Shown here: one piece after another, positions 10,920 to 33,689 of the stretch
How the letters are laid out: each line of letters starts with the position of its first letter
How positions within the stretch are numbered: position 1 is the stretch's first letter
Virus record (IMG/VR): IMGVR_UViG_3300048438_000153
Span: 62,001-126,000 of that record
DNA: 64,000 bases
Direction: 5' to 3' (one strand)
Notes under the pieces: generated by a model
What the model was told of the DNA's origin: nothing
The model's input: the letters and a program-made list of their open reading frames with translations, nothing else
The model's database searches: none
Translations under genes and position numbers: made by a program

Positions 10920-11885
10920 ATGACAAACACAGTAATGACGACAGTTTGTCGTTCATTCGGCGCTACTTTCTCTGAGCTTGAGAAAGAACTAATGCCCGAA
11001 GTGAGCGAATCTTTTGAGGCTACTTTCATCCAAATTGAGAAAGAACTAATGCCCGAAGTGAGTGGGTCTTTTGAGGCTACTTTTTCTGAGCTTGAGAAAG
11101 AGCTAATACCCAAGTCACCGAAGACCTCTCTTAAGCTCTTGAATACGAGTAGGAGAGAGAGAAAGAGAACCTCTCGTAGAGAAGAGTCAGTAAGCTCTCC
11201 CAACGAGACTGCAAAATACCTCTACGATGTGAAGCACAATCGCTTCATAGAATGGCAAGAAAGAATCGCTAAATACGCGCTACGCAAGCGCCTCGCTTAC
11301 AATGAGCACGACGCAGACGACCTAGCGTCTAGCTTCATGGTGTGGCTCGTTAAGAAAGACAAGTTTCAGGGGCGAACATCTGACCCTATCATGTACCATT
11401 GGGTACGGGGTCAGATGTTCGTTCAGTGGGTGTCTCGACTACGAGAGAAGCAAGGTAAAGATGGTCTCTCTAGACACCGCGATAAGAAAAACCGCACCCA
11501 ACAAGAGAAGAAGGTCGGGGAGTTTAAGATTACATCTCCAAACTACGCATCCACCGCGATCAGCTCGACCGACGAAAGTGGGCGCGTATCGAGTGAAGAT
11601 TGGTACTACGATTCGGATACAGACCCGACCTCTGAGGAGCTTGAGAAGAAAGATATAGACTCTCACATCTGCGAGGCTTTCGCGTCTGTAGCGAACGAGG
11701 AGGCTGACGTAGAGACTCTCTACAATGTGATGCAAGAGATGATGGACAAGAGCTATCGCTCAGACCTAGAATGGGCTGATGCTTGGTCTGTCTCAAAGCA
11801 GAAGGTCAAGTACCTCAAGTCCATCGTCAGGGACAGCCTACGGTCGAACCGCGCTCTCAGAGAGATCGTGTCTCTCAGCATCTAA
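10920..11885 (+). CDS. phage sigma-70/ECF-like sigma factor with N-terminal tandem repeats
   Basis: Region-2-like HDADDLASSFMVWL resembles the DAEDL motif. C-terminal region-4.2-like HTH: DLEWADAWSVSKQKVKYLKSIVRDSLR. Confidence 0.6.
   Translation: MTNTVMTTVCRSFGATFSELEKELMPEVSESFEATFIQIEKELMPEVSGSFEATFSELEKELIPKSPKTSLKLLNTSRRERKRTSRREESVSSPNETAKYLYDVKHNRFIEWQERIAKYALRKRLAYNEHDADDLASSFMVWLVKKDKFQGRTSDPIMYHWVRGQMFVQWVSRLREKQGKDGLSRHRDKKNRTQQEKKVGEFKITSPNYASTAISSTDESGRVSSEDWYYDSDTDPTSEELEKKDIDSHICEAFASVANEEADVETLYNVMQEMMDKSYRSDLEWADAWSVSKQKVKYLKSIVRDSLRSNRALREIVSLSI
10956..11114 (+). repeat. about 3 x 57-bp coding tandem repeat (19 aa: F(E/G)ATF..(L/I)EKEL(M/I)PEVS.S)
   Basis: Units start at 10956, 11013 and 11070. 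Units 1 and 2 share gagaaagaactaatgcccgaagtgag. Confidence 0.9.
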
Positions 11886-12454
11886 GACTTGTTGATCACG
11901 ACCACATCATCTTTAGATGGGTATCTCCTTGCAAGCGAGCGCCACACACGCAGAGCGTGATCTGAAGTGGGGTTCGAGTTACAGTAGTTGGGAATGAACA
12001 AGAAAGGGACTCTCTTAGTGCGTCTCTCAAAGACGTAGTGGGCGAGTCTTAAGTAGCCCTCAAGACCACACTTACGCCCCCTGAAGCCCTCTTCTAAGTA
12101 GGAGTTAATCACTTCCACGACGTATACCTTACCATCAGGATTGAGGAGAGCTGAATGGTCAGAGACAAGCTCAGCCATTTCCTCATAGCAGACGTACTCA
12201 TCTAGCTCATCCATATGGACTAGAGAAACCGTAGCCTCAAAATCGCCTATTAACTTGTCTTCAGAGTATGCCTGTATGACACTCGTCAACGAGTCGGAGT
12301 CTATGTCCCAACCGCTCTCTCTGTGGAAAGAGACTTGAGACTTAGCGACGAGACGGCGCTCTCTCGACATCCTCTCAGGCGTAAGTGAGTAATCTTCAGG
12401 TAGAGTGCCTTTTGCCATCATGTGTCGGCTCGCGACTCGGATCGACATACTCAC
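11882..12454 (-). CDS. GNAT-like fold protein with RVASRH leader
   Basis: FRGRKCG resembles an acetyl-CoA loop. C-terminal TSDHALRVWRSLARRYPS. Paralogue of 15121-15630. Confidence 0.5.
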   Translation of the reverse strand: MSMSIRVASRHMMAKGTLPEDYSLTPERMSRERRLVAKSQVSFHRESGWDIDSDSLTSVIQAYSEDKLIGDFEATVSLVHMDELDEYVCYEEMAELVSDHSALLNPDGKVYVVEVINSYLEEGFRGRKCGLEGYLRLAHYVFERRTKRVPFLFIPNYCNSNPTSDHALRVWRSLARRYPSKDDVVVINKS

Positions 12455-12819
12455 CGCTTGCCTCCGTCGTAGGCAACTGCGTGACCCTCTTGGATCATGA
12501 GGTCATTAAGGGATTGACCTAGCTCAGTCATGTCCTCTTCATAGAGCCACAGGACACCGAGCCACCTCCCGAACTTACCCTTCTTAACAGTGTGGACGAT
12601 GACAGTCTTTCCCTCGATCAATTCCTTAAGAAAGTTTTTTGCCGAGTAGCCTCTTTCTTTCTCTTCGAGGTCTGTTGTTCTGATCTCAGGGGTGTTGATC
12701 CCAACAAGCCTGACTTTGACGCGCGCGAAGTGCTTCATGCCCTGATCAATCATCAAGGTCACAGTGTCTCCGTCATAGACAGAAATGACCTCTGCTTTGT
12801 AGTGATATAAGCTCTTCAT
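12451..12819 (-). CDS. thermonuclease (SNase-like)
   Basis: Motifs VYDGDT, VRLVGINTPE, GKFGRWLG and LNDLMIQEGHA. Start moved to MKSLYHY at 12819. Confidence 0.9.
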   Translation of the reverse strand: MKSLYHYKAEVISVYDGDTVTLMIDQGMKHFARVKVRLVGINTPEIRTTDLEEKERGYSAKNFLKELIEGKTVIVHTVKKGKFGRWLGVLWLYEEDMTELGQSLNDLMIQEGHAVAYDGGKR

Positions 12820-12820
12820 T

Positions 12821-13573
12821 TTATTTCCTTTCGGTATTGTTTCTTGAGTCAAACACACTCGCCATAGCAGAACCTAATATGCCTGTTAGGACGAGTAGCA
12901 CTCGCTCAATCATAGCGAGTGAGTCTTTAGCTTCGTTATTACCTGTAATCCAAGAAGTTATAATGAGGACGCCTAGCATTGTTATCAAGCCTACTGTGCC
13001 AGTGAATATTTGTCTTAAGAGTGTGATCTGACCTGTTATCTTCTTTTCCTGTAGCAAGGACTCTTCCGCTTTCATCTTTGCTTCATCAGACTCTTTTTTT
13101 AATTTCTCAAGCTCTTCAATAACCTTATGGTTCTCCTCGATACTCGACTGTAGTTGCTTCTCTCTTTCGACTTCCGAACTACGATCAACAAATAAAGCTA
13201 CAAAGTATCGTTCTTCAGAGTTCTTGATGTCTGCAACATTTGCAGACAATGAAACCAAAGAGCCGTCTTTTCGGACTGCCTCTAGCTTTCTCCAACTACC
13301 CATAATCCCACTACTACGCACAGACCTACCCGAATCTGAACCTTCCTTATAGGAGTTCACATAAGACCTGTGGTTTGAAGAGATACTTTCGGGCATTAAC
13401 TTGCGTACATCTAAGCCCACCATTTCTAAATGTTGATAGCCGAATAAGTGTGAAGCGGGTGTGTTCGCAAATCTTATTTCAAGATCACCTGATTTATCTT
13501 TAGGGTAATCACAGACTACAATAGCGATTTGTAGTCTGTTCCCCATCATTTCAAGAGTCTCTATAACCTTCAT
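12821..13573 (-). CDS. PAS domain (FixL-like) + coiled coil + two C-terminal TM helices
   Basis: IRFANTPASHLFGYQHLEMVGLDVRKLMPE...NHRSYV...RKDGS is a PAS signature. Two hydrophobic segments lie at the C-terminus. Confidence 0.8.
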   Translation of the reverse strand: MKVIETLEMMGNRLQIAIVVCDYPKDKSGDLEIRFANTPASHLFGYQHLEMVGLDVRKLMPESISSNHRSYVNSYKEGSDSGRSVRSSGIMGSWRKLEAVRKDGSLVSLSANVADIKNSEERYFVALFVDRSSEVEREKQLQSSIEENHKVIEELEKLKKESDEAKMKAEESLLQEKKITGQITLLRQIFTGTVGLITMLGVLIITSWITGNNEAKDSLAMIERVLLVLTGILGSAMASVFDSRNNTERK

Positions 13574-13585
13574 TTCTTACATCCC

Positions 13586-14845
13586 TTAACTAGCGATGAT
13601 GTAAGAGATGTAATAGTCTTGAGCTTGGACTGCATTATTGGTGATGTCCAATACCACAGCAAACTGATTATTAGGTGCGTCTATCTCAGCAACAAGAGGA
13701 AGAGTCGTAATCAAAGTCGTGGCAAGCTGTAGAGCATTATCAAGCTGTAGAGAAACCACGATAGATGAAGTGGCGGTTAAGACTCCGACTACTGGTGGTG
13801 TGATCGTTAGGGTAGTTCCTTGAGCACCGTTAGCTAAGTTGAGAGTCTCTCGACCTTGATAGTTGCGAGTACCTACAACGCCATCTGCGTCTACGGAAAG
13901 AACACCCTCTGCTAGATGTGGGATGATTAGATTACCTCCATCTGCACCATTCGCCCCATTAGGTATCTCAAGAGTAATGTCTCCACTCTGATTCCCGACA
14001 CTATCACCTTGACCTGTGGTTAAATAAAAGTCTCCACCATCACTGTCATTTTCGCTGTCCCCACATTGGATCTCTACTCGACCACCACTCTCTTGATGAC
14101 CTGTACCAAGACGAATGTTGAAGTCTCCACCCTCCCCACCAAACAGACCTCCATTACCTGTGTTGAAATGTACACTCCCCCCTTTCGATCCTTCCTCATC
14201 TTGAGGGTTTGAGTCATACCCCTTACCTGTATAAACTCTGAACTCTCCGCCACTGCCAACATCTGAGTCCACATCACCTATGAGCTTGTACCCCTCTGAG
14301 GTGTAGAAGTACATATCGGCATCATCAGCATCGGGTTCACCCGGTGCAAATTCTTGATTTGTAGGTGCGTGAGAAACAACCCGCAAGGCAGAAGTAGAGT
14401 CATCATAAAAGATGTCAACAAACCCATTATTGATACCACTCTTCCCTTTCAATCTTAACCCTTGGTCATTAGCGTCACCTACCTCATCCTGTCCATCATG
14501 TGGGTCACGATTAAAGAGTTCAGTGCCTTCGACTAAATCTAAAGCCCCCCCTAGCTCACCCTCGTAGGTTACTGCCACATAGCCATTAGCGAGGTAGTAA
14601 GCGATTGACCCACTCTCGATAGATTGTTCCACTCTATCTGTGAGAGCCATAGAGACTGTATTATTTCCACCTGTAGTGAAAGTCAAACTTGAGGGAGGTG
14701 CGAGTGATCTTGTGTACTGACTCTGATCGAGATTATCAGCAAGGTCGTTGAAGTAAAGAGTGTACCCTTCACCTGTAAGTTCGGTGTTTGTACGAGGGTC
14801 GATAGGCCCTCTACCTGTATGTGTTAGTGTGATCTTCCTAGACAT
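13586..14845 (-). CDS. glycine-rich beta-repeat structural protein (fibre/decoration-like)
   Basis: Repeated GG.(F/V).h.TG.G units and acidic composition; preceded by the late-type motif. Confidence 0.5.
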   Translation of the reverse strand: MSRKITLTHTGRGPIDPRTNTELTGEGYTLYFNDLADNLDQSQYTRSLAPPSSLTFTTGGNNTVSMALTDRVEQSIESGSIAYYLANGYVAVTYEGELGGALDLVEGTELFNRDPHDGQDEVGDANDQGLRLKGKSGINNGFVDIFYDDSTSALRVVSHAPTNQEFAPGEPDADDADMYFYTSEGYKLIGDVDSDVGSGGEFRVYTGKGYDSNPQDEEGSKGGSVHFNTGNGGLFGGEGGDFNIRLGTGHQESGGRVEIQCGDSENDSDGGDFYLTTGQGDSVGNQSGDITLEIPNGANGADGGNLIIPHLAEGVLSVDADGVVGTRNYQGRETLNLANGAQGTTLTITPPVVGVLTATSSIVVSLQLDNALQLATTLITTLPLVAEIDAPNNQFAVVLDITNNAVQAQDYYISYIIAS

Positions 14846-15120: not shown

Positions 15121-15630
15121 TTAGGGGGCTTCAAGTACTGCGATACAATCGCCCGATGAAGGATACCTTCTTGCTAAGGATGTCCAGACCCGCCTTGCCT
15201 CGTTTGAGGTCACGCCATCCATGCAATAGTGGGGTACAAAGAGGAATGGCTTGCGCCCATTGTCTTTCCAACCCTCTCCCATACACTTCAGATATAGGCT
15301 CTTGCCTATTCCTTGATTTTGATATTCTGAGTTAAGTTCGCTTTCGTTCATGATAAGCACTGTCACCTCACCTCCCCTACCACGAAGAGAGGGAAACTCT
15401 TGGAGTAGGATTCTCACATCACGAATGCAAGGTGAGTTTGTCAGATCATTAGAACTAGTGAGGTCAAAGGTTGCTAGACTGGCATTGATGAGCCCCACTA
15501 CCTTTGACCTCTCACCCGTAGTTCTTTTATAAAGAACTATGTAGAAGTGGTCTCCATCTGTTTCTCTGACATAAACAAGAGAAGAAGACGCTGACAGGTA
15601 CATAGAGGCTACTCTCTCGCAAGGCTTCAC
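15121..15630 (-). CDS. GNAT-like fold protein with RVASMYL leader
   Basis: EYQNQGIGKSLY matches the Q/RxxGxG motif A. Also TSNEARRVWTSLARRYPS. Confidence 0.6.
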   Translation of the reverse strand: MKPCERVASMYLSASSSLVYVRETDGDHFYIVLYKRTTGERSKVVGLINASLATFDLTSSNDLTNSPCIRDVRILLQEFPSLRGRGGEVTVLIMNESELNSEYQNQGIGKSLYLKCMGEGWKDNGRKPFLFVPHYCMDGVTSNEARRVWTSLARRYPSSGDCIAVLEAP

Positions 15631-21556: not shown

Positions 21557-21955
21557 CTAGCGATCCTGATCTTTCTCTGAAGAGTCTAACCCACCAAGAG
21601 GGTAACTCATCCAAGAATACCTCTTTCTCGTGTCTAGGTAGTTGATGAACTTGTCACATTCCCAAGCCTCTTGCTCAAACCTGATGGCAAGGTAAGAGTC
21701 GCGGGTGAAACCCTTCTTTCTGACGATCGCGCTCCACAGATAGTCGAACAAGTAAATCAGTAGGAAGCCAACTACGAAAGTCTCAAGATACTGCTGAAAG
21801 TGAATCGTCTCATGCCTCTTGGTTTCCTCACTGAGCGTGCCCCTAGAAAACACGAAACAGAAGAGAGTGATCGCGCTGATTTCAATAGGGGCAAACTTTG
21901 ATAGCCATACGGGAATCTTAGAATTCTCGAAGAAAAACGGTTTTAAGCACTTCAT
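21557..21955 (-). CDS. HExxH zincin-like protein
   Basis: RHETIHFQQ...IRFEQEA. Confidence 0.65.
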   Translation of the reverse strand: MKCLKPFFFENSKIPVWLSKFAPIEISAITLFCFVFSRGTLSEETKRHETIHFQQYLETFVVGFLLIYLFDYLWSAIVRKKGFTRDSYLAIRFEQEAWECDKFINYLDTRKRYSWMSYPLGGLDSSEKDQDR

Positions 21956-33362: not shown

Positions 33363-33689
33363 TTAAAGAGTGCCGTCGAACTTCTCGTCATCAGTAATTG
33401 CACCTAGAGGCTCTGATGGAGAAATGGGTTTCTTAGGGGGAGGTGTGGGCGCTTCCTTGTCGATAGCAGAGACAGCGATGTGTGTGTACTTGTCGAGTGC
33501 AGCCTGACCCAAAATGTAGCCTATCTGAATGAACCCACTAGTCACGATCATAGAAACGAGCACCATGAAAGCATAGTGCTCGATCTTAGTCTGATACTCC
33601 CAAATCACATAGAACATGAGAATCTTCCACCCGAGATCGGCGATGAGGTAGGCGAGGAACTTCTTACTCTTTAAAGGCAACTTGTCCAT
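33363..33689 (-). CDS. small two-TM membrane protein, holin-like candidate
   Basis: KSKKFLAYLIA start followed by two hydrophobic helices and a charged/Pro-rich tail. Confidence 0.45.
   Translation of the reverse strand: MDKLPLKSKKFLAYLIADLGWKILMFYVIWEYQTKIEHYAFMVLVSMIVTSGFIQIGYILGQAALDKYTHIAVSAIDKEAPTPPPKKPISPSEPLGAITDDEKFDGTL

What the first reader, a model, noticed from the sequence alone, without database searches (positions are those of the whole stretch)
12821..13573. Phage-encoded FixL-type heme-PAS sensor anchored by two TM helices, with no output domain
LMPESISSNHRSYVNSY...GIMGSWRKLEAVRKDGS parallels the FixL heme-PAS pattern LMPE....HD.Y...Y...IIG..R......R.DG, including the His at the proximal-ligand position. 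The PAS is followed only by a coiled coil and two TM helices, with no kinase or cyclase. Inference: an O2/redox-gated membrane protein, such as a lysis regulator or a decoy for host two-component signalling, that lets the phage sense host redox state.
Basis: partly seen in the sequence, partly recalled or inferred. Interest (0 to 1): 0.7.

Follow-up and report, generated by a model that had tools for sequence, protein, structure and literature searches.

The report
Phage heme-PAS sensor driving a membrane hairpin
A marine jumbo phage encodes a FixL-like, probably heme-binding gas/redox sensor joined by a rigid signalling helix to a highly conserved, phage-specific two-helix membrane module, so the phage may couple a membrane event (most likely lysis timing) to the oxygen or redox state of its host.

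Summary
ORF 12821-13573 (-) encodes a 250-aa protein with an N-terminal PAS domain. Its nearest solved relatives, by sequence and by predicted fold, are almost only heme-PAS domains (FixL, EcDOS/DosP). The proposed proximal His (H68) and the FixL O2-binding Arg (R95) are invariant in 42 diverse relatives.

"No output domain" needs correcting. The C-terminal coiled coil plus two-TM hairpin is the most conserved part (89% mean pairwise identity around TM2, 55% for PAS). The same module occurs without any PAS domain in small proteins of other phages. The linker that joins it to the PAS core varies only in steps of seven residues (107 of 107 in the main clade; 10 of 13 in divergent clades). So the hairpin is the output and the PAS domain is a swappable input.

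The family has at least 178 clusters, all from uncultivated phage or metagenome contigs, and lies in unrelated gene neighbourhoods. Function is inferred. In two lineages the gene sits inside an endolysin/holin-like cassette. In another, PAS-less versions sit next to a phage hybrid histidine kinase. In this phage it lies in a tail-gene region, 170 kb from the only clear wall hydrolase. My best guess is O2/redox-gated control of lysis timing, held with modest confidence. Heme binding is untested.

The parts
12821..13573 (-). Whole gene: 250-aa heme-PAS / coiled-coil / TM-hairpin protein (stop codon 12821-12823)
   Evidence: ORF list; translation and coordinates verified; at least 178 relatives of the same length; dN/dS 0.03-0.10 between relatives
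13535..13567 (-). N-terminal cap helix (residues 3-13) preceding the PAS core
   Evidence: AlphaFold secondary structure H3-13; R13 invariant
13181..13525 (-). PAS core (residues 17-131), FixL/EcDOS heme-PAS type
   Evidence: PAS_9 below Pfam's cut-off (23.1 bits). PDB phmmer and profile hits are heme-PAS only. Foldseek and VIA-align rank FixL first
13370..13372 (-). His68 codon: predicted proximal heme ligand on the F-alpha helix
   Evidence: Aligns with the BjFixL proximal His in SRHDSY. Invariant in 42 of 42 relatives. Absent from sister clades that have lost the F helix
13289..13306 (-). I90-M-G-S-W94-R95 (FG loop / G-beta strand). R95 corresponds to FixL R220 and EcDOS R97, the O2-contacting Arg. 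W94 is an invariant residue facing outward
   Evidence: HMMER alignments IIGIGR vs IMGSWR. W94 and R95 invariant. W94 is kept even in heme-less clades
13178..13186 (-). D130-R-S132 junction motif between the PAS core and the linker helix (family consensus D-R-T)
   Evidence: D130 is invariant in all 13 sequences of A5, which include the heme-less clades, and nearly invariant in A1. It aligns with FixL RDLTE
13010..13180 (-). Linker / signalling helix (residues 132-188), predicted coiled coil that runs straight into TM1
   Evidence: Single helix 132-210 in the model. Strongest hydrophobic periodicity at 3.5 residues. Length varies only as 43/50/57/64 in 107 of 107 members, and 31-73 in steps of 7 in divergent clades
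12944..13009 (-). TM1 (residues 189-210, IFTGTVGLITMLGVLIITSWIT), 41% Gly/Ala/Ser/Thr. It is preceded by the conserved juxtamembrane motif Q182-x-x-L-L-R-Q-I-F
   Evidence: Hydropathy and composition; Q182, L185, L186, T193, L196, W208 invariant
12902..12943 (-). Short extracytoplasmic loop and pre-TM2 amphipathic turn (residues 211-224)
   Evidence: Helix break at 211-214 in the model; net charge distribution fits N-in/C-in
12851..12901 (-). TM2 (residues 225-241, VLLVLTGILGSAMASVF), the most conserved block. One face is made of invariant small or polar residues: T230/G231, G234/S235, A238/S239, D242
   Evidence: 13 of 26 columns invariant and mean pairwise identity 0.89; 3.5-3.6-residue periodicity. 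Conserved in PAS-less phage proteins
12824..12850 (-). Short cytoplasmic tail DSRNNTERK (residues 242-250); D242 invariant
12451..12819 (-). Downstream staphylococcal-nuclease-like gene. Its ATG at 12819 lies 1 nt after the PAS stop, so it is co-transcribed or coupled. It is not conserved next to the PAS gene in other phages
   Evidence: PF00565 E 4e-14, phrog_452; junction sequence; absent from the 20 related loci
13586..14845 (-). Upstream 419-aa Gly-rich gene on the same strand, 12 nt from the PAS start; function unknown
   Evidence: no significant family; not conserved in related loci

Best explanation
The gene encodes a dimeric, inner-membrane, inside-out sensor made of three parts.

(1) A cytoplasmic FixL/EcDOS-type PAS domain. 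It most likely binds b-type heme taken from the host through His68, and it reads O2 (or NO, CO or iron redox state) with help from Arg95.

(2) A linker helix of about 57 residues that forms a coiled coil in fixed phase. It starts at the D-R-S/T junction of the PAS core and runs without a break into TM1.

(3) A two-helix membrane hairpin. This is the real output module. Ligand-dependent changes in the PAS dimer twist or shift the coiled coil, and that repacks the invariant small-residue face of TM2 against TM1, against the partner subunit or against another membrane protein.

The membrane event most likely controlled is the timing of host lysis, with the hairpin acting as a holin-accessory or antiholin-like element. 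Lysis would then depend on whether the host is respiring.

Shown by computation: the heme-PAS similarity and invariant His and Arg; the architecture and topology features; strong purifying selection; heptad-phase conservation of the linker; independence and phage specificity of the hairpin module.

Inferred: heme binding, the identity of the ligand, dimerisation, the direction of signalling, and the link to lysis.
For: Heme-PAS:
- PDB sequence hits are heme-PAS only: E 1.8e-9 with the single sequence, 2.4e-12 with the profile.
- H68, R95, M60 and P61 are invariant; I90, M91, G92 and Y75 are nearly invariant.
- Sister clades that deleted the F helix and FG loop have lost H68 and mostly R95 together, as expected if both serve a cofactor.

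Output module:
- The TM2 block has 0.89 mean pairwise identity and the TM1 block 0.71, against 0.55 for PAS and 0.40 for the linker.
- A profile of the C-terminal 86 residues finds only 39 clusters among 1.84 billion proteins. They include genuine PAS-less proteins of 100-175 aa found in 35 viral loci.
- The PAS-less profile matches residues ~140-248 of this protein at E 2e-27.
- The PAS-less group is a separate, well-supported clade.

Signalling helix:
- Linker length is 43, 50, 57 or 64 in 107 of 107 main-clade members.
- The D130-to-Q182 distance is 31, 38, 45, 52, 59 or 73 in 10 of 13 divergent sequences.
- Periodicity is 3.5 residues, and the model shows one helix from 132 to 210.
- Heptad dependence of linker length is the recognised mark of coiled-coil signalling from PAS/LOV sensors (PMC6798134).

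Selection: dN/dS is 0.03 and 0.10.

Lysis link:
- In L070/L071 (protein P0086, 51% identical) the order is tail genes, Peptidase_M15_4 endolysin, TM/coiled-coil 86 aa, secreted 108 aa, PAS-hairpin, 2-TM holin-like 90 aa, N-TM 125 aa.
- In PAS-less group A3 the order is CHAP/PG-binding endolysin, 2-TM holin-like 81 aa, TM+coiled-coil protein, hairpin protein.
- In L008 the PAS gene lies two genes upstream of an SLT lysozyme with a SAR-like N-terminus.
- In L068 it lies beside rIIA-like and rIIB genes and 1.9 kb from a PG_binding_1 protein.

The gene in the window lies in a tail/baseplate-region operon on the same strand.
Against: - No experiment supports any step, and the heme-docking job was not run.
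- FixL's propionate partners R206 and H214 are not conserved (S74 and a variable residue). The FG loop is 6-7 residues longer and is modelled with low confidence (pLDDT 64).
- Lysis placement is not general. Only about 4-5 of about 16 independent PAS-bearing lineages have a wall hydrolase within 4 kb, roughly what chance predicts.
- In this phage the only clear hydrolase (Amidase_2) is 170 kb away and has no holin-like neighbour.
- Other members sit between terS and terL or among early or DNA-metabolism genes.
- Both lysis cassettes already contain a better holin candidate, so the hairpin's role there is undefined.
- The hairpin matches no holin family in Pfam or PHROGs.
- No transcript data were found.
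Confidence: 0.45

Rival explanations
1. The hairpin is a small membrane modulator of single-TM or other membrane histidine kinases, in the manner of MgrB or SafA acting on PhoQ. The PAS-bearing version supplies an O2/redox input in trans to a kinase of the host, since this phage encodes none. It would rewire host two-component signalling during infection.
For: In PAS-less group A4 the hairpin gene lies immediately upstream of a phage-encoded hybrid kinase (HisKA + HATPase_c + receiver, one N-terminal TM, no sensor domain). The gap ranges from a 4-nt overlap to about 100 nt. This is seen in four contigs (L042/L053, L046, L048, L050), with one gene in between in L049 and about 4 kb away in L047. 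A sensorless membrane kinase plus a separate membrane protein is a plausible split sensor.
Against: The association is confined to one lineage of PAS-less proteins. None of 20 PAS-bearing viral loci, nor the 275 kb record, encodes such a kinase, a HATPase_c domain or a receiver. No host kinase partner can be named, because the host is unknown.
Confidence: 0.15
2. The protein controls another membrane property that is not lysis. Examples are superinfection exclusion or immunity (as with T4 Imm/Sp), an rII-like effect on membrane energetics, or a gated ion leak that tunes host metabolism to oxygen supply.
For: The gene neighbourhoods vary, and several contain early or DNA-metabolism genes. One locus has rIIA/rIIB neighbours. 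TM2 has an invariant polar/small face that could line a pore or bind a partner. The gene behaves as a mobile accessory gene whose neighbours are not conserved even at 77% protein identity.
Against: No specific evidence points to any of these functions, and there is no similarity to Imm, Sp or known channels.
Confidence: 0.15
3. The PAS domain does not bind heme. His68 and Arg95 are kept for another ligand or for structure, and the protein senses something other than a gas or redox state.
For: The Pfam PAS match is below threshold. The FixL heme-propionate ligands R206 and H214 are not conserved, and the FG loop is longer. PAS domains change ligand easily, and heme-PAS has arisen several times (PMC10468136). 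Sister clades work without His or Arg.
Against: Every significant solved relative is a heme-PAS domain. The His and the Arg are invariant in the main clade, and both are largely lost in the clades that deleted the F helix and FG loop. Heme binding in PAS domains usually needs only the one His.
Confidence: 0.15
4. The hairpin is only an anchor. The protein is a membrane-tethered heme protein that stores or scavenges heme, O2 or NO, or acts as a PAS-level decoy that pairs with a host FixL-like sensor, with no signal passing into the membrane.
For: There is no enzymatic output domain. PAS domains and their cap helices mediate dimerisation in FixL (title of 1d06).
Against: A passive anchor would not be the most conserved region (0.89 identity, 13 of 26 columns invariant). 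It would not occur on its own in other phages. It would not require heptad-phase conservation of the linker.
Confidence: 0.07

Closest known systems
FixL heme-PAS domain (Bradyrhizobium japonicum, Sinorhizobium meliloti) and EcDOS/DosP heme-PAS
   Same: PAS fold with about 28-32% identity. The His on the F-alpha helix is at the proximal-ligand position. The Arg on the G-beta strand corresponds to R220 (FixL) and R97 (EcDOS). The LMPE...H..Y...Y...I(I/M)G..R...R.DG pattern and the D-x-T/S junction to a C-terminal helix are shared.
   Different: No HisKA/HATPase_c or EAL/GGDEF output. The FixL propionate ligands R206 and H214 are not conserved. The FG loop is 6-7 residues longer. The gene is encoded by phages only. 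The output is a membrane hairpin reached from the cytoplasmic side.
Aer aerotaxis receptor of E. coli (own knowledge of its architecture: N-terminal PAS, F1 linker, TM hairpin, HAMP, MCP signalling domain)
   Same: Domain order for the N-terminal half: a cytoplasmic PAS domain, a helical linker, and a two-TM hairpin with a very short outer loop.
   Different: Aer binds FAD, not heme. Its output is a HAMP plus kinase-control domain after TM2; here the protein ends 9 residues after TM2. No sequence relationship of the hairpins was detected.
Short LOV / short PAS proteins (e.g. PpSB1-LOV) and engineered YF1
   Same: A PAS core followed by a J-alpha coiled coil. Structural matches appear. Heptad-periodic linker length is the sign of coiled-coil signalling (PMC6798134).
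   Different: Short LOV proteins end after the helix and bind flavin. Here the helix continues into a conserved membrane module.
Class II holins / pinholins and antiholins (S21 68/71, T4 RI with holin T; P1 LydA/LydB, PMC9025707; T4 RI-T complex, PMC11413866)
   Same: Two TM helices, N-in/C-in. Both helices are rich in small residues (41% Gly/Ala/Ser/Thr). TM2 has a face of small or polar residues. The C-terminal end is hydrophilic. PAS-less relatives are 100-175 aa. The gene lies inside endolysin/holin-like cassettes in two lineages. T4 RI is a precedent for a sensor domain that sets lysis time.
   Different: No sequence match to any holin or antiholin family. The long cytoplasmic N-terminal coiled coil is atypical. 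Placement next to lysis genes is not general. No functional data.
VqmA-Phi of vibriophage VP882 (phage-encoded PAS receptor; PMC8284805, PMC12802170)
   Same: A phage-encoded PAS-domain sensor that lets a phage read a cue about the host's state and decide when to lyse.
   Different: VqmA-Phi is a soluble transcription factor that binds the autoinducer DPO. It has no heme, coiled coil or membrane segment.
Small membrane regulators of sensor kinases (MgrB, SafA; own knowledge)
   Same: Small phage membrane proteins encoded next to a membrane-anchored kinase that has no sensor domain.
   Different: No homology. The link is seen only for PAS-less relatives in one lineage, and interaction is untested.

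Membership tests
Heme-binding PAS domains (FixL / EcDOS type) | PAS fold (five-stranded antiparallel sheet with flanking helices) | tested here: met
Heme-binding PAS domains (FixL / EcDOS type) | His on the F-alpha helix at the proximal iron-ligand position | tested here: met
   H68 aligns with the FixL proximal His in the single-sequence and profile alignments; invariant in 42 of 42
Heme-binding PAS domains (FixL / EcDOS type) | Distal Arg on the G-beta strand that contacts bound O2 (BjFixL R220, EcDOS R97) | tested here: met
   R95 aligns with the Arg of IIGIGR; invariant
Heme-binding PAS domains (FixL / EcDOS type) | FixL-specific heme-propionate partners (BjFixL R206, H214) | tested here: not met
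   The aligned positions are S74 and a variable residue. The FG loop is 6-7 residues longer
Heme-binding PAS domains (FixL / EcDOS type) | Actual heme binding and ligand-dependent switching | not testable with these tools
   The docking job with heme was not folded and gives no evidence
FixL-type sensor histidine kinases (whole protein) | HisKA and HATPase_c domains C-terminal to the PAS domain | tested here: not met
   No such Pfam match in the protein; no HATPase_c or receiver anywhere in the 275 kb record
Holins / antiholins | Small membrane protein with at least one TM and a hydrophilic charged C-terminus | tested here: inconclusive
   There are two TM helices and a short charged tail. PAS-less relatives of 100-175 aa fit the size criterion, but the 250-aa PAS form does not
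Holins / antiholins | Membership of a described holin or antiholin sequence family | tested here: not met
   No Pfam or PHROG holin family is matched by hairpin modules or PAS-less proteins; atlas leads are at chance level
Holins / antiholins | Gene located in the lysis cassette next to the endolysin | tested here: inconclusive
   Met in L070/L071 and in PAS-less group A3; partly met in L008 and L068. Not met in this window (Amidase_2 is 170 kb away) or in most other lineages
Holins / antiholins | Controls endolysin release or lysis timing | not testable with these tools
   Needs expression or complementation assays
Aer-type PAS-hairpin receptors | HAMP and MCP signalling domains after the TM hairpin; FAD-binding PAS | tested here: not met
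   The protein ends 9 residues after TM2, and the PAS domain is closest to heme-PAS, not flavin-PAS
PAS sensors that signal through a coiled-coil linker | Linker length conserved modulo 7 across homologues | tested here: met
   43/50/57/64 in 107 of 107. 31/38/45/52/59/73 in 10 of 13 divergent sequences; exceptions are 77 (two related sequences) and 42 (one very divergent)

The most novel reading that the evidence does not exclude
This is the first virus-encoded direct gas sensor. It is a heme-PAS domain that reads host O2 (or NO/redox) and, through a phase-locked coiled coil, gates a new class of phage membrane effector. That effector is a holin-accessory, antiholin or pinholin-like hairpin whose cytoplasmic input domain can be swapped (heme-PAS, heme-less PAS, or none). 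Marine phages would use it to hold back or trigger lysis according to whether the host is respiring.
Probability: 0.3. Interest if true: 0.85.

Novelty: new variant of a known kind. Interest (0 to 1): 0.72.

Why it matters
Phages are known to time lysis by superinfection (T4 RI) and by quorum signals (VP882 VqmA-Phi). Direct sensing of oxygen or redox state by a phage protein has not been described in the literature I could search.

Holins are triggered by loss of membrane potential (established knowledge of holin biology). A respiring host that runs out of oxygen therefore risks lysing too early. A sensor that couples O2 status to a membrane lysis component would solve a real problem for phages in oxygen-variable seawater, particles and sediments.

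The family is large (at least 178 clusters), under strong purifying selection, and spread across unrelated phages, including two jumbo phages. It also offers a compact natural example of inside-out signalling from a cytoplasmic PAS domain into a membrane helix bundle, with a clear heptad rule that can be tested by linker engineering. The hairpin module itself is an undescribed phage protein family.

Tried and rejected
- Near-identical or protein-level matches in deposited phage genomes: none for the window, the PAS protein or three PAS-less proteins. No cultured relative or host is available. The DNA polymerase's best hit is an uncultured 485 kb phage.
- Pattern scan of 185,579 species-representative genomes: no cellular copy. 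That search depends on two motifs only.
- Pfam, PHROGs and protein-atlas searches with the hairpin module: only chance-level hits such as L6_membrane, DUF6450 and GTA_holin_3TM.
- Conserved-neighbour analysis of 20 PAS-bearing viral loci: no shared neighbour.
- The idea that the gene always sits in a lysis cassette: rejected after counting lineages. About 4-5 of 16 have a hydrolase within 4 kb, which is not above chance.
- Kinase partner in this phage: none.
- Heme oxygenase in this phage: none.
- RNA runs: none listed.
- Promoter and terminator consensus scans: not above shuffled expectation and uninformative.
- The N-terminal-TM plus Cys-rich neighbours seen in several loci are not all detectably homologous. 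L070's 125-aa protein matches the L020 neighbour (46% identity) but not L012's c4, so I did not treat them as one partner family.
- The short proteins inside the PAS clade are mostly truncated gene calls rather than real PAS-less forms.

Full report
**What is there.** The window is part of a 275 kb IMG/VR virus record, about 88% complete by CheckV. It carries baseplate-wedge, DNA polymerase, DnaB-like and other helicase genes. It was found in 20 seawater or marine metagenome runs at a word share of 0.29 or more. No cultured relative exists: the DNA polymerase's best hit is an uncultured 485 kb phage at 44% identity, and there is no nucleotide or protein match for this region among 50,697 deposited phage records.

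It has its own ribosome-binding site. Its stop codon is followed one base later by the ATG of a staphylococcal-nuclease-like gene. An independent 149 kb viral contig from another sample carries the identical gene and neighbours (L002), so this is not an assembly artefact.

**The PAS domain is of the heme type.** Pfam sees only a sub-threshold PAS_9 match (23.1 bits against a cut-off of 27). Comparison with solved structures is much more specific.
- phmmer puts BjFixL first (E 1.8e-9), followed by RmFixL and EcDOS/DosP. It aligns LMPESISSNH-RSY-NSY with LMPEPDRSRH-DSY-SRY, and IMGSWR with IIGIGR.
- A profile of 42 family members raises RmFixL to E 2.4e-12. All 14 chains below E 0.001 are heme-binding PAS domains, counting 10jx, which is titled a heme-binding PAS domain.
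- Across 42 relatives at 47-79% identity, H68 (the proximal-His position), R95 (the position of FixL R220 and EcDOS R97), W94, M60, P61 and N112 are invariant. I90, M91, G92 and Y75 are nearly so.

Two FixL features are not kept. The propionate partners R206 and H214 align with variable residues, and the FG loop is 6-7 residues longer and modelled with lower confidence. Heme binding in PAS domains usually needs only the one His (PMC10468136), so I regard heme binding as likely. It remains untested, and the docking job gave no result.

**The "anchor" is the output.** Conservation is highest at the C-terminus. Mean pairwise identity is 0.89 for the pre-TM2/TM2/DSR block (13 of 26 columns invariant). 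It is 0.71 for the juxtamembrane motif plus TM1, 0.55 for the PAS domain and 0.40 for the linker. TM2 has one face made of invariant small or polar residues: T230/G231, G234/S235, A238/S239 and D242.

An exhaustive profile search with the last 86 residues found only 39 clusters among 1.84 billion representative proteins. Beside the PAS-bearing proteins, these include complete proteins of 100-175 aa with just an N-terminal helix and the same hairpin. Those occur in 35 viral loci and form a well-supported separate clade. Their profile matches residues ~140-248 of the window's protein at E 2e-27.

There are also sister clades of PAS length in which the F helix and FG loop are deleted. H68 is lost in all of them and R95 in most, while N37, W94 (in all but one), D130 and the hairpin remain. 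So the constant part is coiled coil plus hairpin, and the N-terminal input varies: heme-PAS, heme-less PAS-like, or none.

**The linker behaves as a signalling helix.** The model shows one unbroken helix from residue 132 to 210, running from the PAS junction (D130-R-S, family consensus D-R-T) into TM1. Hydrophobicity in the linker peaks at a 3.5-residue period.

The distance from the end of the PAS core to the juxtamembrane QxxLL motif is 43, 50, 57 or 64 residues in all 107 main-clade members I could measure. In the divergent clades the D130-to-Q182 distance is 31, 38, 45, 52, 59 or 73 in 10 of 13 sequences. Two related sequences have 77, and one very divergent sequence has 42. At least seven length classes in a single phase cannot be chance. 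Heptad-periodic linker length is the accepted signature of coiled-coil signal transmission from PAS/LOV sensors to their effectors (PMC6798134).

Charge distribution and the lack of a signal peptide fit an N-in/C-in topology with the PAS domain in the cytoplasm.

**A real, constrained and mobile gene.** At least 178 clusters at 90% identity share the full architecture. dN/dS is 0.03 (dS 0.31) and 0.10 for two informative pairs, and it is low in both halves. Neighbouring genes share no detectable similarity even between phages whose PAS proteins are 77% identical. A pattern scan of 185,579 species-representative genomes found no cellular copy. The single NCBI label, a Thorarchaeota MAG, sits on a contig with resolvase, amidase and trypsin genes that looks viral.

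**What the hairpin does.** This is inference only, and the clues point two ways.

*Lysis.*
- In L070/L071 (P0086, 51% identical to the query) the order is: tail genes; a Peptidase_M15_4 endolysin; an 86-aa Gly-rich-TM/coiled-coil protein; a 108-aa secreted protein; the PAS-hairpin gene (4-nt overlap with the 108-aa gene); a 90-aa two-TM protein with a charged tail; a 125-aa N-terminal-TM protein; then a strand switch.
- PAS-less group A3 shows the same logic: a CHAP/PG-binding endolysin, an 81-aa two-TM holin-like protein, a TM-plus-coiled-coil protein, and the hairpin protein as last gene of the operon.
- In L008 an SLT lysozyme with a Gly/Ala/Thr-rich N-terminus lies two genes downstream.
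- In L068 the gene is next to rIIA-like and rIIB homologues and 1.9 kb from a PG_binding_1 protein.

*Two-component signalling.* In PAS-less group A4 the hairpin gene lies directly upstream of a phage hybrid histidine kinase with one TM helix and no sensor domain.

*Against generality.* Only about 4-5 of about 16 independent PAS-bearing lineages have a wall hydrolase within 4 kb, which is about what chance predicts. Other members lie between terS and terL, near the portal and ParB genes, or among early genes. In this phage the only clear hydrolase is 170 kb away with no holin-like neighbour. The record has no kinase or receiver. The hairpin matches no described family.

**Verdict.** The heme-PAS reading is well supported by computation. 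"No output domain" should be replaced by [quoted passage not shown]. The most likely role is oxygen- or redox-dependent control of a membrane step in lysis. The kinase-modulator reading and other membrane functions are live rivals. I found no report of a phage heme-PAS protein or a PAS-gated lysis protein in the searchable literature. The known phage PAS sensor, VqmA-Phi, is a soluble transcription factor. PAS domains and kinases are annotated in some phages and giant viruses, but none is close to this protein and none shares the architecture.

Noticed in passing
window 12451-12858 (-), probable start at 12819: A staphylococcal-nuclease-like gene (PF00565 E 4e-14; phrog_452 endonuclease) starts 1 nt after the PAS stop codon, with its ribosome-binding site inside the PAS gene. 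The pairing is not conserved in other phages.
   Followed up: partly
window 15121-15630 (-) and 11882-12454 (-): Two paralogous genes of unknown function (169 and 190 aa, 33% identical over 120 residues) lie in the same operon, separated from the PAS gene by the 419-aa gene on one side and the nuclease gene on the other.
   Followed up: no
window 10962-11122, within ORF 10920-11885 (+): A 57-nt tandem repeat (2.8 copies, 78% matches) encodes a repeated 19-residue peptide (…ATFSELEKELMPEVS…) at the N-terminus of a 321-aa protein. That gene is convergent with the PAS operon.
   Followed up: partly
window 21557-21955 (-); L010:5612-6004: A 132-aa membrane protein with an HExxH motif is 43% identical (E 3e-26) to the gene directly upstream of the PAS gene in an unrelated phage contig (L010). 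In the window it lies 8 kb upstream on the same strand. It could be a second recurrent companion.
   Followed up: partly
L042:7376-8821, L046:7459-8937, L048:7896-9281, L049:5792-7168, L050:7348-8706: Phage-encoded hybrid histidine kinases (HisKA + HATPase_c + receiver, one N-terminal TM, no sensor domain) sit next to PAS-less hairpin genes, among several small membrane proteins that follow the tail genes.
   Followed up: partly
L043:6857-7213, L046:6986-7348 and relatives: The PAS-less hairpin proteins next to those kinases carry a conserved 'SDHE[VI]I.LLE' motif on their N-terminal helix. This raises the idea of a membrane-anchored phosphotransfer (HPt-like) helix. It is not conserved across the whole group.
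   Followed up: no
L068:9506-12564: Homologues of T4 rIIA (710 aa, weak HATPase_c_3) and rIIB (PF26926) lie two genes downstream of a PAS-hairpin gene (P0049).
   Followed up: no
L070 vs L072 (upstream of the 86-aa gene); L003:2058-3497: Homing-endonuclease genes are inserted beside the cassette in some variants: Endonuclease_7 between the endolysin homologue and the 86-aa gene in L072, and an HNH/homing endonuclease directly upstream of the PAS gene in L003. This suggests local gene mobility.
   Followed up: no
L012:650-1066, L018:1317-1802, L019:722-1315, L020:5225-5770, L070:7113-7490: Proteins with one N-terminal TM helix and a Cys-rich extracytoplasmic domain recur next to PAS-hairpin genes in several lineages. 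The L070 and L020 proteins are related (46% identity), but the L070 protein and L012's c4 are not detectably homologous.
   Followed up: partly
G000 95363-95689 (window 33363-33689, -) and G000 206353-206865 (-): Only five small proteins with two or more predicted TM helices exist in the 275 kb record. These two look holin-like: two TM helices plus a hydrophilic or coiled-coil C-terminal part. Neither is near the Amidase_2 gene at G000 243465-244415.
   Followed up: no
L024-L026 (protein P0010): A PAS-hairpin protein is labelled at NCBI as coming from a Candidatus Thorarchaeota MAG. Its contig carries resolvase, Amidase_2, trypsin and NUDIX genes and is probably a mis-binned viral contig.
   Followed up: no
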